Positions 6,105 through 30,166 of a stretch of DNA of 64,000 bases are shown here, in pieces. The stretch's first letter is position 1; each line of letters starts with the position of its first letter. The translations under genes and the position numbers were made by a program. Below the pieces are notes generated by a model. That model saw only the letters and a program-made list of their open reading frames with translations, was not told the DNA's origin and made no database searches. The stretch lies in IMG/VR virus record IMGVR_UViG_3300026484_000087, positions 124,001 to 188,000 of that record, one strand, 5' to 3'.

Positions 6105-9100
6105 TTATTTAAAATACATCTCAACAGCCCTATCTCTAAGGAGATCTAAGACGGTATTAGTGGTACCAATAATATTTGGGCTATTCACTATTCTGGCAGC
6201 GATGCTTCTTGTGCTGAATAAAGCCTCTACATCCCTACCACTTTCAGTTTTGATATCGTAATCATAAACATCACCTACTGTAGATTTCAATTGATTTGCT
6301 ATAACGGCTTTATCACCTATGCCCATACCAACATTATCTTTAATGCTTATTTTTATTTCTACGTTACCTTCAGTTAATGGTTTACCTTTTATAGAGTAAC
6401 TACTATTTACTTTACCAGTTAAAGAGCTGTTAAGGTTATCTTTACCTAAATCTTTATCAGTCTTATCGGTTATCTCTTTTATACTTTTACTCATATCTTC
6501 TTTTTCGCAATTATAATAAACAACTATCTTAGTTATAACTCCTCTCATTTTAGCTTTAGGACTTCTGTTCTTTATATTTTGTAATATAGATAAAGATTCT
6601 TTATCTAATTTAGAATCAGTTCCTGGAACTAGATTATCAGATATTGTAAATAATAAATCATTTGGTTCTACTTTATCACCGATATTAAGTAAGTTTATGA
6701 TATTATCACTAGCTTTAACTATAAAACTTTTTGATTTAATTATAGACGTACCCAATTTATCGGATATTTTTTTGGAGATAGTACATGAATCTTCATATGT
6801 TTCAGTATTCTCCATCAAAGCTACTTTAATAGTATTACCTGTTTTATAGATAACTCTTGTCTTATCGAAGATATCTGGTTCGAAGAAATGTTTATCGTAA
6901 GATATGGTATTACCTTTTTTAAACTTATCACCTTTATCTAAATCAGTTATAAGTATATGTTCATAAGATACTCCTGCCTCTTCTTTAGTAAACCAAGATC
7001 CAAGTTTAACTGTTTTCTTCTTACCATTTTTAAAGATAATTTTTATATTACTTTTACTAACAGATTCTACTACTCCATCATCTTCGGCCATGTAACAGTA
7101 GTTCTCATCTAGTCTATACGGCAATACAGCTTCATAACCTGTTCTAACTGGTGGAACTCTCATTTCATTTATAGCTATACTATGGCTGTTTTGAATATTA
7201 ACAAAGTTAAGTCTTTTAGGATCGTCACTTGTACTAGCTGGTGCTAATAAGCCACTTGTGCTTAAGTAGTTATCAGGTTTAAGATCCTTCTTTTCAGTAT
7301 CAACCATACCTCTAACAGTTTTTATCTTTGGATTAGCAGACATATATGCAGAAACACCAACATCACCACTGTCCTTAACTCCTTCAGATATAACACCTAT
7401 CTCACTGCTGTGTATAACCCTTGTATCCATAGACATTGATTCTTTAGATCTACCTCCAGAACCAAGGTAAGTAACATCCTCATTTTGTTTAAGACTAGCT
7501 ATTGGATTAAGATTATCTACTAGTGCAGAAGTACTATCATTATTTATATCTCTCCATACTGCATAAGGATCCATAATCAACTTTGATTTAGAGAAAACAT
7601 TTTTATTTTCATATTCTCTAATGCTCTTAACTAATTCAGTATATAACATACCAGAAACTCTTTCATAACCTTTTATAAGCATACCATTAGCGTTATTTGG
7701 ATCTATATAGTTGTTGTCTAGTAATAATTCAGATGCTTTTATAAGTAATCCTTTAAAAGTTTCTGGTTCCTTCATTGTGTTAAGTATAGACTTGGTTACA
7801 GGATCTACGAACATGTTTTCCATAAGTTTAATTTCAGTAACATATAGAGGAGGGAGGTTCATACTGTTAAACAGCACTGGAAAGTACTCTCTTTTATTTA
7901 AAAGAACTAACTCTATATCCTTAGTATAGTTTCTTAAACCAGCAATACCTGCCAATATCATTGTAGCTAGTTTATCACTCTTATTTAAAATAACCTTTTT
8001 ATCTTTAAAGGTTAACATATATTCATCATCGGTTAACTGATAACGTTTAGTTCTATCCATTATAACATGTTTTGCTTTTAATAGTTTTAATAAATTGGTA
8101 AAACCAATATAATAAGATAAAAGTATTGCAACCGGTATTCTCTTTTTAAAGATCTTTATAAATGCCGCTTCTATAGGCATATTGTTTTTATTTATGTTAA
8201 GTTGTGTATAAATATCATCCATAGGTTTCTTTTTACTTCCACTACCTATATAAAGGTTATTATCGAAATCCATATAGATTAACTCCATACTATTTTCAAC
8301 TCTACCAACTAGTACATATTTATCTTTTTCTTCAAGAATACTAAGTAGGGTTTTTATATCCGACTTAAGTTCAGCTCTATTCTTATAATCAAAACTATAT
8401 TTTATATTTCCAAGTTTAAACATTTTAACATATCTACTTATCTCAGAATATAAATTAGGTAATTTAAAATCCATTAATTTAACTGGCATTAGAACAACAT
8501 TTTTTATTTTTTTATTTGTTTCACTAGCTTCTATAAGTTTCTTTCTAAACCAAAAACCAACATCATCTTTTTTCATATCAGCTTTAGTAACGAATGATTT
8601 ACCAAAATAAGATGTAAGTGCCACTTTATTGTAGTCTATTTTTCTTATTGGTTTATCTGTACGTTGTTTTCTAAGCTTATACGTATTGCCGGATACAGTA
8701 AACTCACCATTTTCTTTTATAACTGGTAGGTTAAAGAATATTTTAGATGGCTTACCAGATAAGGGTTTAACCATTATAGTATGTGTTTCAACCCCACCTA
8801 GAATAGATTCAGTTGTTTCAACAGTATGGTCTTTTATAACAATATCATTGTTTTGTATACTATAGATAGTTGCAAGTATATCCTTCTTATAAACAGTATT
8901 TATATAATGTTTATCCATAGCTTTAATTGGGTCTTTAAGCATATCTTTATTTTCTATAATATTTATATCTGGTATATCTCCAAGATCCTTAGGTACCTCT
9001 AAATCTGCTTCAGTTATGCTAAGCATCTCCTTCAATGTAGCTTCATTGCCATATGGGGACTTAGCTGTTTCCTGATAATTTAATGCATCATCTATATCGT

Positions 9101-10292
9101 CTTTTTCTTTTTTAGTTATAAGTTTACTTTCTTTTAGTTTTTCAGCCCTTTCTCTAAGAGTTTTATTGCTGTCCATTTTTTCATTTATAACATCATTTAT
9201 GCTTTTATAAGTGCTTTCTATGTCATCCATTAATTCATTAGATTCATCATCATCCATAAGATTATCAGATAACTTATCATAATTGATATCTTTGTCTCCT
9301 TCTAAATCATCAAGAACCTCATTAACATCTACTTTCTTAATATCACTATCATCATTATCTGTTAGTTTTGTAATATCTATTGTATTTATAACATTCTTAC
9401 TGTTTCTAAGTTCACCTATAGACATTGCACCATTTACCATAATGCTTTTAATATATATTAGAAATAGTTTTCTAATTGTTTTACTGTCATTATCTTGTAT
9501 GTTTGTTTTTACATCATATTCCTTAACAGTAGACATTAAAGTCTTAAGATTTAATAAAGTTAACTTATTATTAAAAGAAAATATAAATGTTATGTTTTCT
9601 AATGTTGAATTCTTTATACTCCCAAAAAGGCTATCTTTAAATAACCTAGGTGTAAGCAATTTATAAAACTCTAATATTGTTAAGTGTTTATACGTTGGAA
9701 AGTAGTCTAAAACTTTGTGGTTCTCTATACTGCTATATGTTTCAAATTTACTTCTAGTCGGTAAGTTAGATGGCAACTCTATTAGAACATATGTATGTCT
9801 ACCATTATGTGCTAGATTATTAAAACTATCAGTCATTGTTTTAAACGCATTTCTCCATTTATAATATTCTACCATAGGATTAGCTACATATTTATTAACA
9901 GCAGTTATTACCCCATAGTTATATATAACTAATGTGTTCTTAGGAACTTTAAGACTTCTAACCCCTACAGGTATAAACTTAACATCAGTATTCTTCTTTT
10001 TCATTTTATTTATAATTTGCTTAACTAAACTATGCTTAGCATTTATTTTACCAATAGGCGAACTATATTCAAATTTGGTAACTACCGCTGGTTTCTTAAC
10101 ATTGGATAGATATCCTATACTAGTATTTGGACTAATAGCTAAATCACTAAGTTTAAACCATAATAGTTCAGAACCTTTTGGAAAGAACATTTCTGTATCC
10201 ATTACTATATTTGGATTTAAGAATTGATTAATCTTACGTAACCCAATGTCTTTATATAATTGATCATGGTTCATGATTATATTCCTTTTCAT
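6105..10292 (-). CDS. virion RNA polymerase beta-like subunit (phiKZ gp178-like)
   Basis: 1395 aa; G.GGRS, DSGDVG, SDDPKRLNFVNIQNSH, ETYEDS and GIGDK..IANQLKS beta-subunit motifs. Confidence 0.92.
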   Translation of the reverse strand: MKRNIIMNHDQLYKDIGLRKINQFLNPNIVMDTEMFFPKGSELLWFKLSDLAISPNTSIGYLSNVKKPAVVTKFEYSSPIGKINAKHSLVKQIINKMKKKNTDVKFIPVGVRSLKVPKNTLVIYNYGVITAVNKYVANPMVEYYKWRNAFKTMTDSFNNLAHNGRHTYVLIELPSNLPTRSKFETYSSIENHKVLDYFPTYKHLTILEFYKLLTPRLFKDSLFGSIKNSTLENITFIFSFNNKLTLLNLKTLMSTVKEYDVKTNIQDNDSKTIRKLFLIYIKSIMVNGAMSIGELRNSKNVINTIDITKLTDNDDSDIKKVDVNEVLDDLEGDKDINYDKLSDNLMDDDESNELMDDIESTYKSINDVINEKMDSNKTLRERAEKLKESKLITKKEKDDIDDALNYQETAKSPYGNEATLKEMLSITEADLEVPKDLGDIPDINIIENKDMLKDPIKAMDKHYINTVYKKDILATIYSIQNNDIVIKDHTVETTESILGGVETHTIMVKPLSGKPSKIFFNLPVIKENGEFTVSGNTYKLRKQRTDKPIRKIDYNKVALTSYFGKSFVTKADMKKDDVGFWFRKKLIEASETNKKIKNVVLMPVKLMDFKLPNLYSEISRYVKMFKLGNIKYSFDYKNRAELKSDIKTLLSILEEKDKYVLVGRVENSMELIYMDFDNNLYIGSGSKKKPMDDIYTQLNINKNNMPIEAAFIKIFKKRIPVAILLSYYIGFTNLLKLLKAKHVIMDRTKRYQLTDDEYMLTFKDKKVILNKSDKLATMILAGIAGLRNYTKDIELVLLNKREYFPVLFNSMNLPPLYVTEIKLMENMFVDPVTKSILNTMKEPETFKGLLIKASELLLDNNYIDPNNANGMLIKGYERVSGMLYTELVKSIREYENKNVFSKSKLIMDPYAVWRDINNDSTSALVDNLNPIASLKQNEDVTYLGSGGRSKESMSMDTRVIHSSEIGVISEGVKDSGDVGVSAYMSANPKIKTVRGMVDTEKKDLKPDNYLSTSGLLAPASTSDDPKRLNFVNIQNSHSIAINEMRVPPVRTGYEAVLPYRLDENYCYMAEDDGVVESVSKSNIKIIFKNGKKKTVKLGSWFTKEEAGVSYEHILITDLDKGDKFKKGNTISYDKHFFEPDIFDKTRVIYKTGNTIKVALMENTETYEDSCTISKKISDKLGTSIIKSKSFIVKASDNIINLLNIGDKVEPNDLLFTISDNLVPGTDSKLDKESLSILQNIKNRSPKAKMRGVITKIVVYYNCEKEDMSKSIKEITDKTDKDLGKDNLNSSLTGKVNSSYSIKGKPLTEGNVEIKISIKDNVGMGIGDKAVIANQLKSTVGDVYDYDIKTESGRDVEALFSTRSIAARIVNSPNIIGTTNTVLDLLRDRAVEMYFK

Positions 10293-14742: not shown

Positions 14743-15408
14743 CGTTGCCTTCACATAGGTCGTTACTCTATGCAGTTCTCTTATGAACTTCCCCAGCTTC
14801 CACTGGGAGACGAGACTATATCATGTTCTTCTGACACCATATCAGTAAGAACCAAACCACTTCGATTTAAGCACTAGGTACGTGCACCCACTTGGGCCCT
14901 ACTCCCCGCTACAGGATAGTCGTTGAACATTACCCATATTATATATATATATATAGTAACTTAGGGTCTTAGCTGCTAAAGGGAACCTTAGGTTCCACGG
15001 TTGCCTATTATACTATTATAGTGCTGATATTTATAAACGTTTAGTTGGTTACTCTAAACTGAAATATCGAGGCTATATTAATATTGATCACTTAAGATCA
15101 TCCATACAAGATACATTATTATATCCCAGTAGTTTTGCAACTACTCTTGTTAAACCGTCATAGACTAGTTTCCTGTCTATTGTGGTGGTACAGCTTTAAG
15201 GTTTTCCAGCAATTCAATTTGTTATTCGACATGCTTCTCAGCATGAAGGATCAATTTATTTTTTAACTTAAATTTAACAACATCTTTTGGCCTTTTCTAT
15301 AAAGGCGTTAGTTTTTGTTGTTTTTATTTTAAATCCTATTAGTTTATATGTATAATTAATATATGTTTACTATCTATTTCATCCTAATAGTACCAGTAAA
15401 AAAAAATT
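14743..15408 (-). mobile_element. group I self-splicing intron (IA2-like), 666 nt, no intact ORF
   Basis: Exon ends in U and intron ends in G; P AATTGCTGGAAA (~15203-15214), Q TAGCAGCTAAG, R GTTCAACGACTA (14917-14928), S TGATATAGTC (14814-14823); P1 has a U-G pair at the splice site; P8 and P9 hairpins present. Confidence 0.93.
15274..15327 (-). pseudogene. probable relic of a homing-endonuclease gene in the intron P1 loop
   Basis: AGGA RBS, then ATA in place of ATG, then KTTKTNAFIEKAKRCC*. Confidence 0.4.
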
Positions 15409-16858
15409 AATCTGCTCCTAATCTATCCAGTTTTGAAAAATGGGGACTTAAGGAATTGAAATATGCCTCCGTTAATATAGGATACTCATATACTTTATCT
15501 TCTTCCTCCCAATCAAAACCAAGGATACTAACTGTTCTGGCTTTAACTGTCGTTTTAAGATAAGGTATGCTTGGATATATACCACCTAAACCAGCAACGG
15601 GGTATCTAGTTAAGAAACCAGGATATTTTTTAACATCTTTATATATTGCTAGATATATAAGCTCAGCATATGTTATTGGTCTAAGGTATCTTTTATCTAC
15701 ATCGTCTGGTATATCTAAAGTATTCTTTATAAGTTTTACTTTTTTACCATCATCATAGATAAGGGCAAGATAATAACCCTCAACTTCTATAGGTTCAGAT
15801 CTAAGTTCATCTTGTGCTAATTTATTTATAACACTATTAAGACCTTCATCAGATGTCCACATATCCTTAGTTTTTGGTTTTATATCAACGTTAACAGTTG
15901 TTAAGGTTTTCTTATCAACTAATCTGGCAGTATTGCTATGGATATCAAATACGTCACCAAGTATCTTTAAATTTAATTGGTACTTAGTTATAGGGTTAAT
16001 AGCCTTAGAATATTGGTATAAACCTATAACGGTATTATTAAAAGATATTCTATTCTCACTGTTAGTTAAATCATGTATTACCGATGGTATTGGCGTAATT
16101 ACATTTCTAGTAGAATCTCTTATTGCCCTTTTAGTCCATTTGTTCTGTATGAACTTTTTCTTTCCATCCATCAAAGATATAAAATGATCATATATTTCAG
16201 TTATGATAGTTTGTATTCTAAATCTTATAGGATCTAATATCGTAGCATCATTAGATGATGTAGATATATTCTCAAGAGCATTTGTTGTAGTTAGTAGCTT
16301 TCTATAGATAGCGTTAACTTCATCTTCACTTGGTTTACCTGCATCATCTACTATATAATCTCTCAAACCAGCTGGAAGTACTAAAAATCTATCTATTAAA
16401 ATATCTTGACTTTTATATTTCTTAATAAGTTTAATTTTAAATTCCCTAGCATCACTATTTCTAGTTTCTAATTTAAGTTTATCATATTTAGACATAAAGA
16501 ATTCAAAACCTGTTTCACCGTCATTAGCATTTGAGAGAACAAAATCAGAACTTTTACTATCCCACTTGGCAAAAGCTTTGCCTGACATAATGTCTGAGTA
16601 TAGTTTTTTTAAGCTAGCTATATGTTTATATATTAAAGGGTGTAATACTTTTATATGTAAATTTACATAACCGAATCTTTTATTTCTTTCTTCACTTCCA
16701 ACTCTACCAAATATTTCAGTAGAGAATAATCCATCTGGATTGAAGTTTTTACTAGATGATTCGAAGATGCTAAGATCTTTAACTTCACCTATCATTTTTA
16801 TTTGGTCTCTATTAAGTATTAATAAATCTATATTAAAAGGTTCCATTTTTTCTAACAT
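15409..16858 (-). CDS. virion RNAP beta'-like subunit (phiKZ gp180-like), exon 1; spliced product 538 aa
   Basis: PDGLFSTEIFG, VLPAGLRD, TRNVIT and TRYPV motifs; ORF stops at RLGAD inside the catalytic motif. Confidence 0.93.
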
Positions 16859-16933: not shown

Positions 16934-19900
16934 ATGGCTGATGATACAGAAATCGACTTAGATGACGATATAGGATTAGATGACGATGATATGGATTTCG
17001 GTTTCGAGGATCCTTTTTCTGAGCCCCCTCCTCCTAAGGATACTAGAGAAGCTGTTAGTAGAAGCATAAGTAAAGTTGGTAGTAGCTTCATGGATGAATT
17101 TACCGATGATAAAGTTGAAGTTGCTTCTGAAATGGTTAAAGCAAGTATTCCTAAAAGATTATCTACAGAAGCTAGCGGGTATGGATCAGTTGTAGACTCT
17201 TTTAAAAAGGATTTAAATACATCTGGTACAGAGATAAAGAATGCTGCTATACCTATGATAAAAGCAGTAGAATCATTTGTTCCAGAAGGAGGTCGTTTAG
17301 AATCGTTTATGAACCTAGCTAAAGAAAAGTTAGGTATGAATGAAGAAGAACGTACAAGTGAAGATATTGCAGCTGATGCAGCTGCTAGGGCTGCTGGTTC
17401 GGTAGCAGAAGTACTTGGAGAATTTCAGGATAAAGAAACGGCTAAGGATGCTATCAATTCCGTAATACAAAATAAGAAAGATCTTTCTAATATAGAACTA
17501 CAAGCTGGAATGGCCGGGCATCTTGAAGCAATGTCTAATTTTAACATAGATGTAACTAATGCATATTATAGAAAATCTTTAGAGTTACAATATAGACATT
17601 TATTTACTGCTAATGAGCAATTGGATATAACTAAACAAGGTTTTGAAACATTTAAGAACCAATTAGAATCTATTGTTGCTAATAGTGCTTTACCGGATTT
17701 AGTTAAAACTAAAAATTCTGAGTTTATGAAGCACAGACTATTAGAAAGAGCTGGAGAGAGTCTATTTGCTAGAACAGGGGTATTTGATAGTCTTAAAAAG
17801 AAATTAAGTGCTGAAGTACAAGGTGTAACTAGTATCATAGCTAATGGTATGACCGGTTTAGGTGATGCTGCAGATATGGTTAAATCTACTGCCGAAATGT
17901 CTGAGATGGCTGGGGGTAAAGAGGGCATGCTTGGTAGCCTTATGGCTGGTGGAGTTAAGGGCTTTGTTGGTAATAAGATAGGCGACATATTCGGTAAAAC
18001 TGCTATAGGCAAAAAAGGTATAGATTTAGTTAAAGATTTAACTATGGATATGTCCGGTACTTTTGACAATTTAGCAGAAAATAGAGAAGACGGATTGCTT
18101 AAGAATATATTTAGTGGTCTAAGTAGCTTTACATCTAATGAAGATGAAGAGCGTTCGTTTGGTATAAATAAAATAGATAGAGATGGAGTTGCATTATTTG
18201 ATGGTAAAGTACATACGTCTATAACTAAAATAATACCATCTTTATTATCTAAGATACTTAAAGAAGTAAGTTCTAGTAGATCAGGTAATGAGGAAGAAGA
18301 ACTTAGATTTGATTATGATACAGGTTCTTTTAAAACAAAATCAGATATATCTGATAACTTAACAACAAAGCTGGATAATAAGCTTTTGGATTCTGGTACA
18401 ACATTTAGTATCGATAGAATATTAAACGATATAGATAAAGAAATAAAACTTAATCTATCTGAAGAAGAATTAGCAGACATTAAAGAAAATATTTTAATGT
18501 ATACTATAAATGGTAAATCTTTAAATCCTAAAACTCTAGAGAAAAATGGTTTTTACGACGATCTTAATCCAGAGTTGGCAGATAAATTCAAAACAGCTAT
18601 AGATAAATACCTAAATGTTGAGGACGATAAATTAAGAGATACTAGGGTTAGTTTCCTTAATAAAGAATTAAATAACATTAAAACAAATGCTCCAAGTCCA
18701 CAAGATATACTTGAAAGCTATGATTCATCTGGAAGTATGGATGTTCTGGTAGATAAAGGCTTTGTTAAACTTGATGAGAAAACAGGTGACTATAAATTAG
18801 ATAAGGATAATTATAGAGAGTTACTTGGTAAGTCTGTTAGAAACATTAAGGATAAAGAAGAAGTAAAAGATAAAGAGTATAAATCTTTTGCTGAAAAGTT
18901 ACTAGCTGATAAAATGAAGAAAGCTGGAATATCTAAGGACGAAGAATCTGTTACAAATGAACCATCTAGTAATACAGGTAAGTTCTTTAAGGGTATTGCC
19001 ACAAGTGTAAAAGGGTTTAGTACAAATCTTGAACAAAATGCTATAGATCTAGTAGATGGCAAAAAAGATATAAGTGGTAAAATATCTGAATTAGGTAAGG
19101 GTACAAAAGAGTACATCACTGGCAAAAAAGATTTATCAAATCTTAGTTTTAGTACAGAAGCCAGCGATGACTTTAATCCATTAGCACCTATAAAAGTTAA
19201 GAGGTCTTTACTTACCGATTTTAAAACTGGTAAGGATTTTGTTAGTGGAATACATTCTATATCTGATGTTAAAAATATACTGGAATCTACTGATAAATAT
19301 AAAACAATAGAAAGTAAAATAAAAGCTGTTAAGAAATTGGCAGAAGAATCGGAAAATCCTAAAGAGTTTGTAGAATCTTTTAGGAAAACTGATGAATATA
19401 AAAAACTATCAACTAGCGGTAAAGCAGCGATAGATAAAGTTAGTGGTACTATAAGTACTGTTGGAAAAGCCATTAAGGAAGATGTAGAAAATACAAAAAC
19501 TTTTAAAACAGCTGAAACGGCAGTTACTAGAGGTAAGAAATTAGCATCTGATGTTGTTAATAGTAAGCCAATTAAAAAGATAACTGAATCTAAGATAGTT
19601 ACAAATGCTATTGAAGACTTAGATGGAATAAAAACTAAAGTTACTAATTTAGCTAATCTATCAGATATGTCTACAGTTGTAGAAGAGTTATGGGTAAAAG
19701 TTGAAAGTAAAATAGAAGAGCTAGAAGCATTAGATAAAAATGATGTTATAAATAAAAGAATAGAAGCTCTTAGAAATTTATCTTCAGATATAGAAAAATT
19801 TGAAGTAGATGAAAATAATATAAATGAAAGTAGAAAAACAGTATTAGGTTTTATAAGTACTTTAAGTAAATTACTATCAACAGCTATTGCCACGGATGTT

Positions 19901-22900
19901 AAAGATACTATAGTTAGTAAAGTATCTCCTATTAGTAAGAAGATAAGTCATGTTACTAATAAGTATACATTTAAGAAACCTACAATCGATGAAAAAGATA
20001 CTAATGCGGAAGAAGTTAGTAAGAAAGTAGAAAAGAAAACTACTAAACAAACTTATAAACCAAAACCGAGTAGAAAATATATTAAGAAAGAAGCAGGTGA
20101 AGTAATACCTGGTAAACCTACTATTATAGCTGGTAAGGCTTCTAGTTATAAATCTGCAGTAGTTCCTGATAGAAAACCTACATTTGATTTCAGCGATAAC
20201 AATGCTAAACAGGCTATAATTGATAAATTGAAGTTTACTAAAGGTGGACAGTATAAGTTCAGTTCTTCAGCGGATGTAGAGCAATTAAAAGATATACTTA
20301 AGTTACCGGCTATACCTGTTAAAATAGTTAGATTGTTATTAGATTTTAATTTTATAGGAACAATAGGTTCTGATAGCACAATGCCAGCATCATTTAGTGC
20401 AGCATTCGTAAAAGAGGTACCTGGTCTAAAAGATGACTATCTATTCTTAATAACTAAACAAACTTTAGATATGGCAGAGGCTAATCCAGAAGTACTTATA
20501 GAAATGATATCTCATGAACATGAGCATTTGGTTCAAACTACTGATGGTAGATTAAGATTTCCTCAACAGGATGAAAGTATAGCTGGTCACTACTACAGTG
20601 AAATAGATTTTGATAAAGATAAATTCAAAACAGCTACACATTTAATACCGTTTAAACATTACTTAGATTCTCCATGGGAAACAGAAGCATATAGAGAAGG
20701 TTACTCTAATGTATATGATTACTATATAGAGAATGGTATAATACCTGAAAAGACGACTAGAGAAGAGTTTATAAAACAAGCTCAAGACACTAACTTCAAA
20801 CAGATAAGAGACCAGAACAAAGTAATACTTAAACAATATGAGGATTTATTTAAACAGAATAATGCTCCATGGTATTATGATAAAGAAGGAGATATCGATT
20901 ATGATAAAATACCTTCTTTAAAAGCTATGCAAGAAACGCCTACAAGTTTCACATACGAAAGTCCAAATGGGCCAGATGACGGTGTAGTAGATGTTAATGC
21001 GGAACAGATTGATATTGGAGGCGATCCAAAAGTTGCTGCCGGTATAAAAACTGATAGAAAAGAAACCTTAAAAGATAAGCTATCTAGACAAAAAGATAAA
21101 CTTGTAAATACTGGAAAAGATATAAGTAAAAAGGTTACTGCTAATAAAACAGTAGATAAACTATTACATAAAAATAAAGATCTTACTAAGATGTCTTTTA
21201 GTACTGAAGATAATAGCTTTAATAAGTTAGCTCCGGTTAAAAGAGAAAATAGAATAGATAGTTTTATACAAAGTACTAAGGATACTGTTAAGGATACAAA
21301 GGATACTGTTGTAAACAGTAAACTATATAAAGACAGCATTGAAAAAATAAAATATATAGAAACATTCTTATCTAATAAAGTAGATAAAATAGTAACTCCA
21401 GATATTAAGAGAACAGTTATAGATAAAATAGATTCTTATGTTCTTGATAAAATGACAGCTCTTGGTAAGATAGATACTGATGATAAACGTAAAACATATG
21501 ATGGATTACAGAGTGCTAGGGATAAACTAAAAGCTATAGATGTAAATAAAAATACAACTAAGGATTTTATAAATAGTACAAAATCGGTATATTCAGATAT
21601 AAATAAATTTGGTCCGAATGAATTTAAAGAACTGGTATCTGATATAAAAACTAAATCTATAGATAAGCTTACTGAATTTAAAGGTAGGGTTGAAGATAAC
21701 GTTGCTATAAACAATATAAAAGATGATGTTATTGAAAGAGCTACTGACGTTAAAGAGTTTGTAGACAATAATGAAACAGTTAAAAACATAAAAAACTCTG
21801 TTAGTAATGTTGTTAAAGTTAATGATATAAAAGATAGTAAAGCTGGTAAGTTAATTAAAAAACATATTCCTAAAAGTTTTACTGATAGTATAGCCAACAT
21901 TAAATCTACTGTATTTGATGCTCCTAAGGATGAGAGAGTACATGAGTTCGATGTTAATGAAGAAGATAAAACTGAACAACAGGAACTAAAAGATATTCTG
22001 TTTAAGATAACTGATAGTTCTGATTCAGATAGTCTTAGATTAAATCTAAAAATATATTTGGAAAAAGTAAATAAAGAGATAGATAAAGTAAGTGACTTCA
22101 TTTCTAAAGATAAAGAAAGAGAACTTAAGTTTAGAGGAAGAGTAGATAAGTTAAAGAACATTAGTGAAAAACTATTTAATATAGACATTAATGAAAGTTC
22201 TACTATAAAAGATCTATCTAAAGAACTTAATGAGGGATTAGGTACTCTTATATCTGACGTTACGCCATCTAAGTTTAAAACTAGTAGCGGTCCAACGAAA
22301 GAAGAAGAGGATAAAGCTAAAGAAGAAAGTAAAGAAGATTCATTATTAGATATACTTGATTCTGATAATCCTATAGATGCATTACAAAGTAAAATTAAGA
22401 ATGCCGTTAAGTCTAAAATAAAAGGCTTATTAAAATCTGGAGTTAAAGGTGCTTTTAACTTAGGTAAAGGTATTATTCAGAGAGATATTGAACGTGGTAA
22501 AAAACTTAGAGCGTTCCTTAAAAAGAAACTATTTGATAAAAAGGATGGTTCACCTGGATTTGTTAAAACTAAACTAAATAAAGGTTTAAACTTTGCTGGT
22601 AAGGTTTTAAGAAAAGGTAAAGATCTAGCATCTGATATAAATGATAAAAGCATAAATGTAGTTAAAGCTGATATCAGAAATGGTGAACGTCTTAGAGGCA
22701 TGCTCTTTAAAAGTAAATCTAAAGATAATGAAACAAAACATGAAGAAGCTAAAACTACAGTAGAACCTATTGTCAAGATATCTAGTGCTACAAAAGATGA
22801 AAAAGTAAAAGAGATATCCGATAATGCTAAGGGTACAGTCAAAAAGAAAAAACCTATTAAATCTAAGAAATCTCATAAACAAAAAAGAGGAATAATAGAT

Positions 22901-25864
22901 CCTTCTACTATTATATATACTAGAGGAGAACATGGACAACGTGTACTTAAGAAAACTAGTATAGCTGGAAGTTCTAATAAACTTAGTACTAGTGCTGACA
23001 GAGATGGTGATGGTAGACGTGATGGTTCTTGGTTGGATAAGGTCTCTAAAACAAAAGATGATAAGGTAAAAGCATCTAAGAAAACAAAACAAGTAAAAGG
23101 TATATCTGGTAGTGCCAATGTAGTTAAATCTGCTTTCGATAGAGATGGTAGCGGTAGACGTGATGGTTCTTGGTTGGATAGACTTAAAAAGAAAAAAGAT
23201 ACTGCGATAAATAGTGGAAAGAACATATTAGCTAAGGCTAAAGAAAAAGGTTTTTCATGGTTGCCTATGTTAATTGGTGCTTTTGGTTTCTTAAAACCAT
23301 TGTTGGGCAAATTAATTGGTGGCGTAAGTAGTTTAGGTAAATTTATAGTAAATGGTGTTGGAAGTGCTTTTAAATCTGTTGGTAGTTTCTTATTAAATGG
23401 AATTAAAGGAATCTTCGGATCATTGGGTAAAATGTTATCTGGTCCATTAGAGGCTGTTAAGGGTTTTGTTTCTAATGGTATAGACAAAGCCAAGGCTGTT
23501 GCTGGAAAAGCTCTTGATGCTGCTAAGAATGCCGGTAGTAAGGTATTAGAAGTAGCTAAGAATTCTAAAGCTGGCAAAATTGTTGCTAACGTTGCAAGTA
23601 AGGCAAAAAATGCCATTGTATCAGGTGGATCTAAATTATTAAACGGAGTTAAGAATTCTAAGGTGGGTGGTGTAGTTGCTAAAGTAGCTAAGAAGATACC
23701 TACTGATGGAATACTTAAACTTCTTAAATCTTTTAAAGGTTTAATATTTAAGAAACTAGGTAAAAAAGCAGGGGCCACAGTTGCTGCTAAATTGGCTGGT
23801 AAAGTTGCATCTAGAATTGTTCCATTTGCCGGAGCAGCATTACTTGCTTATGATGCTGCTAAAATAGGTTATGATGTCTTCCATAATGGTACTAGTCTTA
23901 AGAGTGCCATATCTAAACAGATTCTTGGATTTGATTTATTTAGTAAAGACGATGTACCTAAAGATGAGGATGGTAATCCTATAAAACCAGATGAGCAAAC
24001 CTCGGAAGCTTCTAAAGGTAAAAAAGATAATTCAGCTAAAGTAGAAGCAGTTGTTAAAAAGAAAGTTAAACAAGCTGGATTCATAGATGTTGACGGTAAG
24101 AAAGTAAGGGTTTCTACTAAACAAATGGCTATGATAAAGGATTTAATGGATAAGGGTGAAAGTCAAAAAGCCTTAATGTTATTAAATACTTTAAAAGAAC
24201 AACAATATAAAGATAAAGATAATGATGCTAAAAATAAAGCGTTAGAAGAAGAGAATAATAAAATAGACGAATTTAATTCTAAGATAGATGAAAATAAAAC
24301 ACAATCTAAAAAAGTAATCAAAAAGAAAAGTAAAAAACTTAATAAAGTTATTTCTATTCTTAATGGCGATAAAAAGAAAATAAGCAAGAAAATAGATAAA
24401 GTATTTGAAGATAAGAATATTAATATAAAAGAAAAAAGAAAAAGAATAAGTAAATTAACGTATATAATAAACAGCATAAATACGATAATTCATGAATTAA
24501 AAAATAGTTACGATATAAATGATCCTGAGGATATTGAAGAACTTGTTAGTTTATATGGTAAAGGCTATAAATATGCTTTAAGTAAATCATTATTAGATAC
24601 TCTTAATGGCATAGATAAAAATACAAAAGATATAAATACAAAGGTAAAAAGTAAATATTTAAAAGATCTTAAAGAAGATAAGGATAACAATATAGAAAAA
24701 CCTAAGGAAGAAAAAGGTTTACTTAGTAGAGCTGCAGATAGCATAAAGAATTTCTTTGGATTTAGTAGTAAGAGAGAAGAACCTACTACAATGACCCCTA
24801 GTATTAATAGTGCCAGTACAAACAGTGGCGGTAAGATAGCAAAACTTAAACCTATGACCGCTACTGATAGTGATCTTATCTCGGACCTTAAACGTGATGA
24901 GGGAGTTGTATTACATACATATAAAGATCATCTAGGTTATAAAACCATAGGCACAGGACATCTTACTGATGAACGTAAAGGAGGCATTCCATTACGTAAA
25001 ATAATTGGTGAAGATAAAGATAATATCACTATGGATGAAAATGATACTATATTGAAATATGATATAGATAGAACATCTAAAGAGGTAGAATCTAAAATAC
25101 CATGGTTAAAGAAAAAACCAGAACCGGTTAAAAAATCTATTATTAACATGGCGTTTAACTTAGGTACTAATGGATTACTTAAATTCAAAAATACTTTAAA
25201 ACATGTTAAGAATGATGAGTACAATGAGGCTGCTCATGGCATGCTTAATAGTAAATGGGCAAGACAAGTTGGTAATCGTGCTACAAGAATAGCTAGTACC
25301 GTTGCTTCTGTAGATTATGCTACAGCAAAACAACATGATAATAAAGTTACTGAAAAGCCTTCTGTATTTAATACAGATAAAGCTATAAGTAATAGTAGAA
25401 AAGTTGTTCCAGTAGCTAATAATGTTACCTATAAACCAAGACCTAAAACTGAAGTTAAATCAGTTGCTAAAGTTGAAAGTGTAGCAGCTCCTGTTAGTAC
25501 TACAAATACTAGTATAGGTAAAACTATAACTAAGAATACTACCAAAATAAAAGATCCAGCTAAAACTTTAGCGGTTGAAAGTAATAAAAAACTATCTGCT
25601 GTTGGAGAAGTTAGCGATAAATCATTAAGCGAATTAAAAACACTTAATAAGACAATGACTGATTCTCTAGATATACAGAGACAAACATTAGAAGCAATGA
25701 CTCAAATGTTAAATTTGAATCACGACATGCATAATAGAAGTTTAAGTATGGATAAAGATATAGTGGATGTAGAGGTATCTAAAACAAAAAAAATAGCTCC
25801 TCCGCAAATGCAATCTATGCCTAAACCAGCTATGGGACTTGAAAAAAGAAGTTTCGCAAGTTAA
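16934..25864 (+). CDS. giant tail-associated protein (phiKZ gp181-like) with C-terminal T4-type lysozyme and internal HExxH domain
   Basis: 2976 aa, divergent from the RNAP gene; YYRKSLELQY, N.ALPDLVK and ITKIIPSLL motifs; two DRDG.GRRDGSWLD repeats; DEG...YKD.LG..TIG lysozyme motif. Confidence 0.88.
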   Translation: MADDTEIDLDDDIGLDDDDMDFGFEDPFSEPPPPKDTREAVSRSISKVGSSFMDEFTDDKVEVASEMVKASIPKRLSTEASGYGSVVDSFKKDLNTSGTEIKNAAIPMIKAVESFVPEGGRLESFMNLAKEKLGMNEEERTSEDIAADAAARAAGSVAEVLGEFQDKETAKDAINSVIQNKKDLSNIELQAGMAGHLEAMSNFNIDVTNAYYRKSLELQYRHLFTANEQLDITKQGFETFKNQLESIVANSALPDLVKTKNSEFMKHRLLERAGESLFARTGVFDSLKKKLSAEVQGVTSIIANGMTGLGDAADMVKSTAEMSEMAGGKEGMLGSLMAGGVKGFVGNKIGDIFGKTAIGKKGIDLVKDLTMDMSGTFDNLAENREDGLLKNIFSGLSSFTSNEDEERSFGINKIDRDGVALFDGKVHTSITKIIPSLLSKILKEVSSSRSGNEEEELRFDYDTGSFKTKSDISDNLTTKLDNKLLDSGTTFSIDRILNDIDKEIKLNLSEEELADIKENILMYTINGKSLNPKTLEKNGFYDDLNPELADKFKTAIDKYLNVEDDKLRDTRVSFLNKELNNIKTNAPSPQDILESYDSSGSMDVLVDKGFVKLDEKTGDYKLDKDNYRELLGKSVRNIKDKEEVKDKEYKSFAEKLLADKMKKAGISKDEESVTNEPSSNTGKFFKGIATSVKGFSTNLEQNAIDLVDGKKDISGKISELGKGTKEYITGKKDLSNLSFSTEASDDFNPLAPIKVKRSLLTDFKTGKDFVSGIHSISDVKNILESTDKYKTIESKIKAVKKLAEESENPKEFVESFRKTDEYKKLSTSGKAAIDKVSGTISTVGKAIKEDVENTKTFKTAETAVTRGKKLASDVVNSKPIKKITESKIVTNAIEDLDGIKTKVTNLANLSDMSTVVEELWVKVESKIEELEALDKNDVINKRIEALRNLSSDIEKFEVDENNINESRKTVLGFISTLSKLLSTAIATDVKDTIVSKVSPISKKISHVTNKYTFKKPTIDEKDTNAEEVSKKVEKKTTKQTYKPKPSRKYIKKEAGEVIPGKPTIIAGKASSYKSAVVPDRKPTFDFSDNNAKQAIIDKLKFTKGGQYKFSSSADVEQLKDILKLPAIPVKIVRLLLDFNFIGTIGSDSTMPASFSAAFVKEVPGLKDDYLFLITKQTLDMAEANPEVLIEMISHEHEHLVQTTDGRLRFPQQDESIAGHYYSEIDFDKDKFKTATHLIPFKHYLDSPWETEAYREGYSNVYDYYIENGIIPEKTTREEFIKQAQDTNFKQIRDQNKVILKQYEDLFKQNNAPWYYDKEGDIDYDKIPSLKAMQETPTSFTYESPNGPDDGVVDVNAEQIDIGGDPKVAAGIKTDRKETLKDKLSRQKDKLVNTGKDISKKVTANKTVDKLLHKNKDLTKMSFSTEDNSFNKLAPVKRENRIDSFIQSTKDTVKDTKDTVVNSKLYKDSIEKIKYIETFLSNKVDKIVTPDIKRTVIDKIDSYVLDKMTALGKIDTDDKRKTYDGLQSARDKLKAIDVNKNTTKDFINSTKSVYSDINKFGPNEFKELVSDIKTKSIDKLTEFKGRVEDNVAINNIKDDVIERATDVKEFVDNNETVKNIKNSVSNVVKVNDIKDSKAGKLIKKHIPKSFTDSIANIKSTVFDAPKDERVHEFDVNEEDKTEQQELKDILFKITDSSDSDSLRLNLKIYLEKVNKEIDKVSDFISKDKERELKFRGRVDKLKNISEKLFNIDINESSTIKDLSKELNEGLGTLISDVTPSKFKTSSGPTKEEEDKAKEESKEDSLLDILDSDNPIDALQSKIKNAVKSKIKGLLKSGVKGAFNLGKGIIQRDIERGKKLRAFLKKKLFDKKDGSPGFVKTKLNKGLNFAGKVLRKGKDLASDINDKSINVVKADIRNGERLRGMLFKSKSKDNETKHEEAKTTVEPIVKISSATKDEKVKEISDNAKGTVKKKKPIKSKKSHKQKRGIIDPSTIIYTRGEHGQRVLKKTSIAGSSNKLSTSADRDGDGRRDGSWLDKVSKTKDDKVKASKKTKQVKGISGSANVVKSAFDRDGSGRRDGSWLDRLKKKKDTAINSGKNILAKAKEKGFSWLPMLIGAFGFLKPLLGKLIGGVSSLGKFIVNGVGSAFKSVGSFLLNGIKGIFGSLGKMLSGPLEAVKGFVSNGIDKAKAVAGKALDAAKNAGSKVLEVAKNSKAGKIVANVASKAKNAIVSGGSKLLNGVKNSKVGGVVAKVAKKIPTDGILKLLKSFKGLIFKKLGKKAGATVAAKLAGKVASRIVPFAGAALLAYDAAKIGYDVFHNGTSLKSAISKQILGFDLFSKDDVPKDEDGNPIKPDEQTSEASKGKKDNSAKVEAVVKKKVKQAGFIDVDGKKVRVSTKQMAMIKDLMDKGESQKALMLLNTLKEQQYKDKDNDAKNKALEEENNKIDEFNSKIDENKTQSKKVIKKKSKKLNKVISILNGDKKKISKKIDKVFEDKNINIKEKRKRISKLTYIINSINTIIHELKNSYDINDPEDIEELVSLYGKGYKYALSKSLLDTLNGIDKNTKDINTKVKSKYLKDLKEDKDNNIEKPKEEKGLLSRAADSIKNFFGFSSKREEPTTMTPSINSASTNSGGKIAKLKPMTATDSDLISDLKRDEGVVLHTYKDHLGYKTIGTGHLTDERKGGIPLRKIIGEDKDNITMDENDTILKYDIDRTSKEVESKIPWLKKKPEPVKKSIINMAFNLGTNGLLKFKNTLKHVKNDEYNEAAHGMLNSKWARQVGNRATRIASTVASVDYATAKQHDNKVTEKPSVFNTDKAISNSRKVVPVANNVTYKPRPKTEVKSVAKVESVAAPVSTTNTSIGKTITKNTTKIKDPAKTLAVESNKKLSAVGEVSDKSLSELKTLNKTMTDSLDIQRQTLEAMTQMLNLNHDMHNRSLSMDKDIVDVEVSKTKKIAPPQMQSMPKPAMGLEKRSFAS
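22997..23180 (+). repeat. two intragenic DRDG(D/S)GRRDGSWLD repeats
   Basis: GGTAGACGTGATGGTTCTTGGTTGGATA occurs twice, 141 bp apart. Confidence 0.85.
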
Positions 25865-29605: not shown

Positions 29606-30166
29606 ATGAATAACAATACTATAAATATTCTGGCTATAGATCCAGGAACAACAACTATAGGTGTTTCAATATTTACTATTAATGTAATAGATTATAGTAT
29701 CGTAGCAATAGAAACCATTTTAGTTGATACCAGTATACGTTTAGTGTCATCAGATACAGCATCAGATCTTTTATTAAGATTAGAACGATTATACCATCGT
29801 GTTGTAGAGCTTATAAATTATTATAAACCATATATAGTTAGTTTAGAGAATGGTTTTATAAATAGATTACGACCAGCAGCATATGGGCCATTATCACAAT
29901 CAATAATGGCAATAGAGTTAGCTGTTAGAAATACTAATCCATATATAAAGATTTTTAAATTTGCACCTAAAACTATAAAGAAGGTTACTACTACAGCTGG
30001 TACAGCAGGTAAAAATGATATGTTAGCTGGTATAAAGACCATACCAGAGATATCTAATAAGATCAATCCAGATCTTATAAGTGAACATGAGGTTGATAGC
30101 TTAGGTGTTAATTACACTATGCTTGAATATATAAGAGAGAACCCAATAATTCTCTTAATGATATAA
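29606..30166 (+). CDS. ruvC: RuvC-like Holliday junction resolvase
   Basis: ILAIDPG, VSLE, P..IKK and HEVDSL catalytic motifs. Confidence 0.85.
   Translation: MNNNTINILAIDPGTTTIGVSIFTINVIDYSIVAIETILVDTSIRLVSSDTASDLLLRLERLYHRVVELINYYKPYIVSLENGFINRLRPAAYGPLSQSIMAIELAVRNTNPYIKIFKFAPKTIKKVTTTAGTAGKNDMLAGIKTIPEISNKINPDLISEHEVDSLGVNYTMLEYIRENPIILLMI

What the first reader, a model, noticed from the sequence alone, without database searches (positions are those of the whole stretch)
19124..21240. HExxH protease-like domain embedded in the giant tail protein between duplicated SFSTE motifs
Seen: an aromatic-rich globular segment (MISHEHEHLVQ at aa 1194; YLDSPWETEAY) interrupts low-complexity Lys-rich sequence. 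It lies between KKDLSNLSFSTE..FNPLAPIK and NKDLTKMSFSTE..FNKLAPVK. Established: HExxH plus a downstream Glu marks zincins, and the phiKZ head protease cleaves after S/A/G-x-E. Inference: a peptidase cargo that may be excised and delivered on infection. The flanks could also just reflect an internal duplication.
Basis: partly seen in the sequence, partly recalled or inferred. Interest (0 to 1): 0.65.

Follow-up and report, generated by a model that had tools for sequence, protein, structure and literature searches.

The report
Minimal zincin domain inside giant tail protein
A giant tail protein of a phiKZ-like jumbo phage carries a small zinc-protease-like domain that otherwise occurs as a free-standing, unnamed phage protein; the fusion is rare, and the repeated SFSTE motifs around it are a recent duplication, not a conserved excision signal.

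Summary
All the named motifs sit at the stated positions in one 2976-aa ORF (window 16934-25864, +). This ORF is a phiKZ gp181-type tail protein with a C-terminal lysozyme domain.

The aromatic-rich block, aa ~1095-1345, is a conserved domain. Its HExxHxxQ and Y-x-D-S-P-W-E-x-E-A-Y motifs are invariant in the only four giant proteins that carry it, which are 29-93% identical. An exhaustive HMMER search of 1.84 billion proteins found no other carrier. No gp181 homologue among 50,697 phage records has it.

Its core is homologous (hhalign 97%, E 2e-10) to a widespread, unannotated family of 133-179-aa standalone phage proteins, phrog_10499/16532. Two members whose surroundings were read lie among replication/early-type genes of T4-like phages. 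Profiles of that family hit only zincins in the PDB (selecase, Spartan, M48). The AlphaFold model shows the zincin order of elements and resembles SprT-like phage proteins, but no solved zincin matched by structure.

The SFSTE flanks belong to a ~95-aa internal duplication found only in this lineage. The second copy has no counterpart in the two more distant carriers, and [SAG]-x-E is not enriched.

Best reading: a captured minimal zincin peptidase carried in the tail core. This makes a polyvalent-type virion protein. Its substrate is unknown.

The parts
16934..25864 (+). Giant ORF (P0001, 2976 aa), a phiKZ gp181-type tail / tape-measure / cell-puncturing protein
   Evidence: The N-terminus matches phrog_3201 at E 4.8e-57 and the C-terminus matches Phage_lysozyme PF00959. 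It lies next to virion-RNAP beta-subunit genes, as in phiKZ-like phages. The N-terminus has homologues in 169 jumbo-phage records.
16946..19069 (+). Conserved gp181-family N-terminal region (aa 5-712)
   Evidence: phrog_3201, profile positions 8-742 of 2408, E 4.8e-57. It is 47% and 40% identical to P0003 and P0004.
19049..19333 (+). Repeat copy R1 (aa 706-800), containing SFSTE-1 (nt 19145-19159) and FNPLAPIK
   Evidence: Aligns with R2 at 33% identity over 94-95 aa, E ~1e-7. Conserved in P0003 (E 1.6e-6, FGTE at the site) and only weakly in P0004 (E 0.086, no S/A/G-x-E).
19334..20215 (+). Lys-rich, aromatic-poor linker (aa 801-1094) between R1 and the domain
   Evidence: Composition. No credible Pfam match. 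Most of it is missing in P0003. It is partly shared with P0004 (ESDNPKEF... block).
20216..20968 (+). Conserved globular domain (aa 1095-1345): zincin-like core plus N- and C-terminal extensions found only in the giant proteins
   Evidence: Alignments A2 and A3. Only P0001, P0002, P0003 and P0004 carry it. It is 46% and 29% identical to P0003 and P0004, against 47% and 40% for the N-terminal region.
20339..20719 (+). Minimal zincin-like core (aa 1136-1262), homologous to standalone phage proteins of phrog_10499/16532
   Evidence: hhalign of A3 against A6: 96.9%, E 2e-10. The A6 HMM hits the whole 206-kb genome only at window 20477-20704, E 7e-7. phrog_10499/16532 match 3 of 4 giant domains. 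AF2 model: pLDDT 69, pTM 0.73.
20513..20536 (+). HExxHxxQ (aa 1194-1201), the putative Zn-binding and catalytic helix
   Evidence: H, E, H and Q are invariant in all 36 aligned sequences. The motif lies in predicted helix 62-80 of the model.
20660..20692 (+). Y-L-D-S-P-W-E-T-E-A-Y (aa 1243-1253), the putative 'glutamate helix' with the third metal ligand
   Evidence: Y, P, W, E, E and A are invariant and D is >=90% conserved in 36 sequences. The motif opens predicted helix 124-143.
21101..21361 (+). Repeat copy R2 (aa 1390-1476), containing SFSTE-2 (nt 21194-21208) and FNKLAPVK
   Evidence: P0002 has SFSAE here. No counterpart of R2 is detectable in P0003 or P0004, and neither shows an internal duplication.
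24893..25276 (+). Phage_lysozyme domain (aa 2654-2781)
   Evidence: PF00959, E 2.3e-10, 41.3 bits against a cut-off of 22.3.

Best explanation
Shown: aa ~1095-1345 of the gp181-type giant tail protein is a conserved domain. Its core (aa ~1136-1262) is homologous to a widespread family of ~135-180-aa standalone phage proteins that carry the signature HExxHxxQ ... Y-x-D-[QS]-P-W-E-x-E-A. That family has the sequence hallmarks of a minimal zincin metallopeptidase of the SprT/WLM/minigluzincin kind. These are two His and the catalytic Glu on one helix, and an invariant Glu pair on a later helix. Inferred: an ancestor of a small clade of AT-rich phiKZ-like phages captured such a gene into the variable middle of its tail-core protein. 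This gives a polyvalent-type virion protein, with a gp181 N-terminal module, the zincin, a hydrophobic Gly/Ala-rich region and a murein hydrolase. The peptidase is therefore pre-made and physically tied to the part of the virion that is thought to be expelled through the host envelope at infection. The two standalone relatives whose surroundings were read sit among replication/early-type genes. So the most likely role is proteolysis inside the infected cell or envelope from the first moments of infection. It could act in trans on a host or phage protein, or in cis to cut the giant protein into working pieces, as proposed for MPTase domains of polyvalent proteins. The SFSTE-bearing flanks are a lineage-specific ~95-aa duplication, not part of the domain's conserved make-up.
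For: All motifs are present and non-random. The domain occurs in four syntenic giant proteins with the catalytic-type residues invariant at 29% identity. It is conserved at 46% and 29%, against 47% and 40% for the N-terminal module. Bridge sequence P0005: hhalign 95%, E 2.7e-8. Family profile A6 against the domain: 96.9%, E 2e-10. The reciprocal HMM search of the genome hits only aa 1182-1257. At least 216 relatives of the small family exist in viral contigs. Family members repeatedly give sub-threshold hits to zincin Pfams: M91 in 18/32, DUF6782 in 14/32, SprT-like in 13/32. All 7 (A6) and 14 (A7) PDB sequence hits at E<=10 are zincins: selecase 7.5e-4, Spartan 4.3e-3, M48/BepA, projannalysin and snake-venom metalloproteinases. 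The AF2 model has the order helix, three strands, helices, HExxH helix, insert, Glu helix. This is the zincin MPTase core as described in PMC5512222. BFVD Foldseek returns SprT-like phage proteins at probability 1.0, E 1.5e-3 to 6e-3, TM 0.44-0.56. The Atlas feature and shape searches point to SprT-like/DUF3920 phage clusters. One depositor calls a family member a 'WLM protease domain protein'. Standalone members lie next to DNA pol B, UvsX and a DnaB-like helicase, or near gp32/gp33-type genes. MPTase fused to lysozyme in large virion proteins is a described theme (PMC5512222).
Against: There is no Pfam hit for the giant-protein domain itself, even at E<=10. No solved zincin matched the model by structure: Foldseek against PDB found nothing at E<=0.001, and the best VIA-align Z was 5.3 to an unrelated protein. 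The beta-sheet part of the model has pLDDT <50. The PDB sequence hits are marginal in E-value and cover the part up to the HExxH helix only. Metal binding, activity, substrate, ejection into the host and any self-cleavage are all untested. The domain could act at assembly rather than at infection.
Confidence: 0.6

Rival explanations
1. Excisable cargo. A phiKZ-type prohead protease, or the domain itself, cuts after S-T-E at the two SFSTE sites. This releases aa ~743-1423, including the peptidase, for delivery.
For: Both sites fit S/A/G-x-E and sit in paired repeats that bracket the domain. P0002 keeps S-A-E at site 2, and P0003 keeps G-T-E at site 1.
Against: R2 has no counterpart in P0003 or P0004, and P0004 lacks a fitting motif at site 1. 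All still keep the domain. [SAG]-x-E occurs 31 times against 42 expected, so a match means little. The homologous protein in SPN3US is assigned to the tail, and that study assayed cleavage only in head proteins (PMC10052503).
Confidence: 0.1
2. Cell-wall peptidase. The zincin cuts peptidoglycan peptide stems or an envelope protein, helping the lysozyme domain to open the wall during tail penetration.
For: It shares a polypeptide with a murein hydrolase in a wall-crossing tail protein. P0004 swaps the lysozyme for a VgrG3-like hydrolase, and P0003 has no recorded Pfam domain there, yet both keep the zincin. From my own knowledge, tape-measure proteins often carry muralytic domains.
Against: The two standalone relatives read in context lie among replication/early-type genes, which suggests a cytoplasmic role. 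The nearest known zincins (SprT/WLM, selecase, M48) are protein peptidases and are not known murein peptidases.
Confidence: 0.12
3. Assembly-time maturation. The domain trims the giant protein, or neighbouring tail proteins, during tail assembly, as tape-measure proteins of other phages are trimmed. It has no role in the host.
For: The MPTase of P1 DdrB is proposed to process its own protein before packaging (PMC5512222). phiKZ-like phages show extensive virion proteolysis (PMC7824862).
Against: Nearly all other gp181-type proteins assemble without such a domain. Standalone relatives are not in structural gene modules.
Confidence: 0.13
4. Inactive structural remnant. This would be a zincin-derived fold kept only as a spacer or interaction module.
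For: Activity is untested, there is no Pfam match, and part of the model has low confidence.
Against: H, E, H, Q and P-W-E-x-E-A are invariant across 36 sequences down to ~14-29% identity. Decaying active sites normally lose such residues first.
Confidence: 0.05

Closest known systems
PHROG families phrog_10499 and phrog_16532 (small phage proteins, function unknown)
   Same: They share the core and the signature HExxHxxQ ... Y-x-D-[QS]-P-W-E-x-E-A. Direct hmmscan E-values are 6e-5 to 1e-4, profile-profile probability is 97%, and the reciprocal genome hit is E 7e-7.
   Different: They are standalone proteins of 133-179 aa. The two read in context lie among replication/early-type genes of T4-like phages, and other members occur in T4-like and some jumbo phages. 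Here the core is embedded at aa ~1136-1262 of a 2976-aa tail protein. It has a longer insert between the two motifs (52 against 32-50 residues) and extra conserved N- and C-terminal extensions.
SprT-like / WLM (Wss1, Spartan) and minigluzincins (selecase MJ1213, projannalysin)
   Same: They have a minimal zincin layout with HExxH. They give the best PDB sequence hits of the family profile (selecase 7.5e-4, Spartan 4.3e-3) and the best predicted-structure hits (SprT-like phage proteins in BFVD).
   Different: Matches are below Pfam's gathering score, and the giant-protein domain gets no hit at all. There is no conserved third His after HExxH; instead a Gln follows at +3 and an invariant E-x-E-A lies ~50 residues downstream. 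There was no significant structural match to solved members.
Zincin MPTase domains of polyvalent proteins of phages and conjugative elements (Iyer et al. 2017, PMC5512222)
   Same: In both, a zincin peptidase is embedded in a very large virion-associated protein together with a lysozyme-type domain. The described core of helix, three strands, HExxH helix and Glu helix matches the model.
   Different: No match to Pfam MPTase-PolyVal was seen. The carrier is a phiKZ gp181-type tail-core protein; that paper never uses the term 'tape measure' (0 occurrences). The domain derives from a different, SprT-like small-protein family.
phiKZ gp181 / SPN3US gp239 (structural peptidoglycan hydrolase, tail tape measure)
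   Same: It has a homologous N-terminal ~700 aa, giant size, a C-terminal muralytic domain and a position beside virion-RNAP genes (PMC5380687; PMC10052503).
   Different: None of the 169 phage records with a gp181-like N-terminus encodes the zincin domain.

Membership tests
Zincin (clan MA) metallopeptidase superfamily | HExxH motif on an alpha-helix | tested here: met
   HEHEH is at aa 1194-1198. H, E and H are invariant in 36 sequences. The motif lies in predicted helix 62-80 of the model, in blocks with mean pLDDT 85 and 83.
Zincin (clan MA) metallopeptidase superfamily | Third metal ligand (Glu, His or Asp) on a following helix | tested here: inconclusive
   An invariant W-E-x-E-A opens predicted helix 124-143, in blocks with mean pLDDT 88 and 93. 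Which Glu binds metal, and the geometry, could not be read because no coordinates were available.
Zincin (clan MA) metallopeptidase superfamily | N-terminal helix plus three-stranded sheet before the HExxH helix | tested here: inconclusive
   The model has H6-13, E15-21, E31-36 and E47-49 in the right order, but residues 16-47 have pLDDT <50.
Zincin (clan MA) metallopeptidase superfamily | Significant similarity to solved zincin structures | tested here: inconclusive
   By sequence profile, all PDB hits at E<=10 are zincins, best 7.5e-4. By structure there was no match: Foldseek PDB gave none at E<=0.001, and the best VIA-align Z was 5.3 to an unrelated protein.
SprT-like (PF10263) / WLM (PF08325) | Score at or above Pfam's gathering threshold | tested here: not met
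   The giant-protein domain gets no hit at E<=10. Standalone relatives get hits in 13 of 32 members, with best E 5.1e-5. The two whose scores were shown (12.4 and 13.2 bits) lie below the 25.6-bit cut-off.
SprT-like (PF10263) / WLM (PF08325) | Third zinc ligand is a His shortly after HExxH (from my own knowledge of Spartan/Wss1) | tested here: not met
   No conserved His follows HExxH. The invariant residues are Q at +3 and the distant P-W-E-x-E-A.
phrog_10499 / phrog_16532 | Significant profile match over the core | tested here: met
   hmmscan E 5.9e-5 and 6.8e-5 in 3 of 4 giant domains. hhalign 96.9%, E 2e-10. Reciprocal single hit in the genome, E 7e-7.
phiKZ gp181-type giant tail protein | Homologous N-terminal module, muralytic C-terminal domain and synteny with virion RNAP genes | tested here: met
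   phrog_3201 E 4.8e-57; PF00959 at 41.3 bits; RNAP beta-subunit genes at 6105-10292 and 15407-16858.
Polyvalent proteins (Iyer et al. 2017) | Several unrelated effector domains in one protein that is delivered with the DNA, typically with a zincin MPTase | not testable with these tools
   The architecture fits, with a zincin-like domain plus a lysozyme. Delivery into the host cannot be shown from sequence.
Substrates of the phiKZ-type prohead protease (cleavage after S/A/G-x-E) | A conserved, used cleavage motif in a head-located protein | tested here: not met
   The motif is not conserved among carriers and is not enriched, with 31 against 42 expected. The homologue is assigned to the tail in SPN3US. 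Actual cleavage is untested.

The most novel reading that the evidence does not exclude
In a small clade of phiKZ-like jumbo phages, the tail-core protein injects a ready-made SprT/Wss1-like protease together with the genome. The protease would either cut itself free or cut a host (possibly DNA-bound or defence) protein before any phage gene is expressed. The whole unannotated phrog_10499/16532 family would then be an early-acting phage protease against a host target.
Probability: 0.25. Interest if true: 0.65.

Novelty: new variant of a known kind. Interest (0 to 1): 0.42.

Why it matters
It names and gives a testable active site to an unannotated but widespread family of small phage proteins. 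At least 216 relatives were found in viral contigs. In isolated phages the family occurs mainly in T4-like cyanophages, in other T4-like phages and in some jumbo phages. It also shows a rare natural experiment in which that enzyme is welded into the expelled tail core of a phiKZ-like phage. If the domain is active, the fusion argues that the family acts very early in infection. It also extends the 'polyvalent protein' strategy to gp181-type tail proteins of phiKZ-like (Chimalliviridae-type) phages. For annotation, the SFSTE pairing should not be read as a processing signal.

Tried and rejected
- Pfam scans of the domain and of all four carriers at E<=10 gave nothing relevant.
- phmmer and a profile of the giant-protein domain against PDB sequences gave only chance-level rows, such as I-SceI at 0.12.
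- blastn and tblastn of the domain against 50,697 phage records found no match at 1e-3. At E<=10 the only useful row was the cyanophage bridge protein.
- The word-index protein search for standalone relatives with the 241-aa domain and with the 4-sequence core profile found nothing.
- The first AlphaFold run, on a 3-sequence alignment, was unusable at pLDDT 48.
- Structure searches of the better model against solved structures gave no zincin. I report this as inconclusive, not as evidence of a new fold.
- Scans of IMG/VR for further carriers, using the domain profile or the N-terminal module, found none beyond the window's own record. One metagenome scan found only the window's contig and a 92%-identical one.
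- tblastn of aa 600-830 (repeat R1) against phages found no match, so R1 is not a general gp181 feature.
- A self-BLASTP of the whole protein reported only the diagonal. The repeat showed up only when the pieces were compared separately.
- Not used: complex prediction, because I make no binding claim; the read-mapping tools; and alternative genetic codes, for which there was no sign of need.


Full report
**Setting.** The window is part of a 206-kb IMG/VR virus contig with about 29% G+C. The finding lies inside one ORF, 16934-25864 on the + strand, encoding 2976 aa (P0001).
- Its first ~710 residues match phrog_3201 at E 4.8e-57.
- Residues 2654-2781 match Pfam Phage_lysozyme at 41.3 bits, against a cut-off of 22.3.
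- The neighbouring genes on the opposite strand are virion-type RNA polymerase beta-subunit genes.
- tblastn of the N-terminus finds 169 jumbo-phage records at 20-26% identity, infecting Pseudomonas, Erwinia, Ralstonia, Serratia and others. The hits fall in genes annotated as tail fibre protein, transglycosylase or hypothetical protein.
- So this is the counterpart of phiKZ gp181, the structural peptidoglycan hydrolase at the tail tip (PMC5380687). In SPN3US the counterpart, gp239, is called the tail tape measure protein (PMC10052503).

**The observation.**
- HExxH would be expected 0.018 times by chance in this His-poor protein.
- The 200 residues around it are aromatic-rich and Lys-poor compared with both flanks.
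- The two SFSTE motifs belong to a longer internal duplication. Residues 706-800 and 1390-1476 align at 33% identity, E about 1e-7.

**The domain and who has it.**
- A word-index search restricted to the domain region found two other giant proteins. P0002 (2987 aa) is 93% identical in the domain. P0003 (2281 aa) is 46% identical.
- An exhaustive HMMER profile search of 1.84 billion representative proteins found only P0001, P0003 and a third carrier, P0004 (2464 aa, 29% identical).
- P0003 and P0004 lie in the same gene order. The upstream polymerase gene of the P0004 contig is 65% identical to that of the window.
- Across these proteins, H-E-x-x-H-x-x-Q and D-S-P-W-E-x-E-A-Y are invariant.
- The domain is 46% and 29% identical to P0003 and P0004. 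The N-terminal module is 47% and 40% identical.
- No isolated phage with a gp181-like gene has the domain. The refutation condition 'the domain is common in homologues' therefore fails. The domain is a rare insertion.

**What the domain is related to.**
- Pfam gives nothing for the domain. Two PHROGs of unknown function, phrog_10499 and phrog_16532, match three of the four carriers at about 1e-4, across both motifs.
- A permissive tblastn turned up a 162-aa hypothetical protein of cyanophage C48C1, P0005. It has the same HExxHxxQxxxGRL and Y-I-D-Q-P-W-E-N-E-A-Y. It matches those PHROGs at 1e-9 and aligns to the giant-protein profile with hhalign probability 95%, E 2.7e-8.
- Scanning IMG/VR with the two shared motifs gave at least 216 confirmed relatives. 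All 77 ORFs that I extracted are small, 85-179 aa, with 32-50 residues between the motifs; the giant proteins have 52.
- A non-redundant alignment of 32 of them (A6) matches the giant-protein alignment at 96.9%, E 2e-10.
- An HMM of A6, searched against all six frames of the 206-kb genome, hits only window 20477-20704, which is aa 1182-1257, at E 7e-7. Homology therefore holds in both directions, and the phage has no standalone copy on this contig.
- In the 36-sequence alignment the invariant columns are exactly H, E, H, Q, Y, P, W, E, E and A.

**Is it a zincin?**

Evidence for:
- Family members repeatedly give sub-threshold Pfam hits, and these go mainly to metallopeptidase families. Peptidase_M91 is hit by 18 of 32 members, DUF6782 by 14, SprT-like by 13. 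Peptidase_M30 is hit by 2. M78, BSP, WLM, PhageMetallopep, Peptidase_M1 and Tox-MPTase2 are each hit once, and single chance-level rows go to unrelated families.
- Profiles A6 and A7 searched against PDB sequences return 7 and 14 rows at E<=10, and every row is a zincin. They are selecase MJ1213 (7.5e-4), Spartan (4.3e-3), M48/BepA, projannalysin and snake-venom metalloproteinases.
- With the 36-sequence alignment, AlphaFold gives pLDDT 69 and pTM 0.73. The order of elements is helix, three strands, helices, the HExxH helix, a hairpin insert, then a helix opening with W-E-x-E-A. This is the zincin MPTase core as described in PMC5512222.
- Foldseek against predicted viral structures puts SprT-like phage proteins on top, at probability 1.0, E 1.5e-3 to 6e-3 and TM 0.44-0.56.
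- The ESM Atlas feature and shape searches point the same way.
- One GenBank record annotates a family member as a WLM protease domain protein.

Evidence against or missing:
- The sheet region of the model is of low confidence.
- Neither Foldseek nor VIA-align found a solved zincin.
- The family lacks the third His of SprT/WLM. It should be filed as a distinct minimal zincin family with a probable Glu ligand, not as a member of PF10263.

**The flanks.**
- P0002 has SFSAE at the second site.
- P0003 keeps repeat R1 (E 1.6e-6), with FGTE at the site. At the second position it has no Glu and no detectable R2.
- P0004 has only a weak R1 (E 0.086) with no fitting motif, and no R2.
- Neither P0003 nor P0004 shows an internal duplication.
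- [SAG]-x-E occurs 31 times in P0001 against 42 expected.
- The duplication is therefore younger than the domain capture, and the STE match carries no weight.
- In SPN3US the homologous protein is assigned to the tail, and that study assayed prohead-protease cleavage only in head proteins.

**Mechanism.**
- The two standalone relatives read in context sit among replication or early-type genes. One lies next to DNA polymerase B, UvsX and a DnaB-like helicase. The other lies near gp33- and gp32-type genes. I take this to mean that the family acts on proteins inside the infected cell.
- Fusing it into the variable middle of the tail-core protein makes it available without new synthesis. That protein also carries a hydrophobic Gly/Ala-rich region and a murein hydrolase.
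- This is the logic proposed for zincin MPTase domains of polyvalent proteins. There the peptidase either frees the other modules or attacks host targets (PMC5512222).
- Standalone SprT-like peptidases in jumbo phages have been suggested to target host proteins (PMC7824862).
- Which substrate is cut, when, and whether the domain leaves the tail are inferences only.

**Comparison and novelty.** Zincin domains inside giant virion proteins are a known theme, so this is not a new kind of system. Three things appear new:
- the zincin family itself, which PHROGs lists as function unknown, which Pfam lacks, and which the sources mostly call 'hypothetical protein' where they name it at all;
- its signature, HExxHxxQ plus P-W-E-x-E-A;
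- its capture by a gp181-type tail protein. My literature searches found no description of this.

**Verdict.** The excision-at-STE reading is not supported. Interest is moderate.

Noticed in passing
window 22997-23032 and 23138-23173 (aa 2022-2033 and 2069-2080 of the giant protein): A twin motif, D-R-D-G-x-G-R-R-D-G-S-W, occurs about 47 residues apart. It is conserved twice in P0002 and P0003, and once in a diverged form in P0004. It looks like an acidic, possibly metal-binding loop. Its function is unknown.
   Followed up: partly
window ~23230-23920 (aa ~2100-2330): A long Gly/Ala/Lys/Val-rich stretch follows the twin motif. It contains one strongly hydrophobic 19-residue segment, aa 2110-2128. 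This is a candidate membrane-inserting part of the expelled tail-core protein.
   Followed up: partly
C-termini of P0001 (window 24893-25276), P0004 (L086:4684-12078) and P0003 (L091:2767-9612): The muralytic end is swapped between close relatives. P0001 has Phage_lysozyme and P0004 has T6SS_VgrG3-like_C (PF21277). P0003 has no recorded Pfam domain but has a G-G-Y-T-G...V-H-x-x-E-x-V motif. From memory, I associate that motif with tape-measure proteins.
   Followed up: partly
loci L005-L084 (IMG/VR), L088-L090; phage records such as P-SSM2, P-HM1, S-SM2, Cr30, DLP_6, XacN1: The standalone HExxHxxQ / P-W-E-x-E-A family is widespread and almost entirely annotated as hypothetical. Some genomes, such as XacN1 and DLP_6, show two matching places.
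   Followed up: partly
window 6105-10292 (-), 15407-16858 (-), 29606-30166 (+): There are virion-type multisubunit RNA polymerase beta-subunit genes (phrog_3148, phrog_2986) and a RuvC-like resolvase gene. These confirm a phiKZ-like gene order around the giant gene.
   Followed up: no
window 17566-24477, - strand: Several long antisense ORFs of 104-360 aa lie inside the giant gene, for example 18811-19893. They are most likely by-products of the skewed composition of the coding strand. They were not examined.
   Followed up: no
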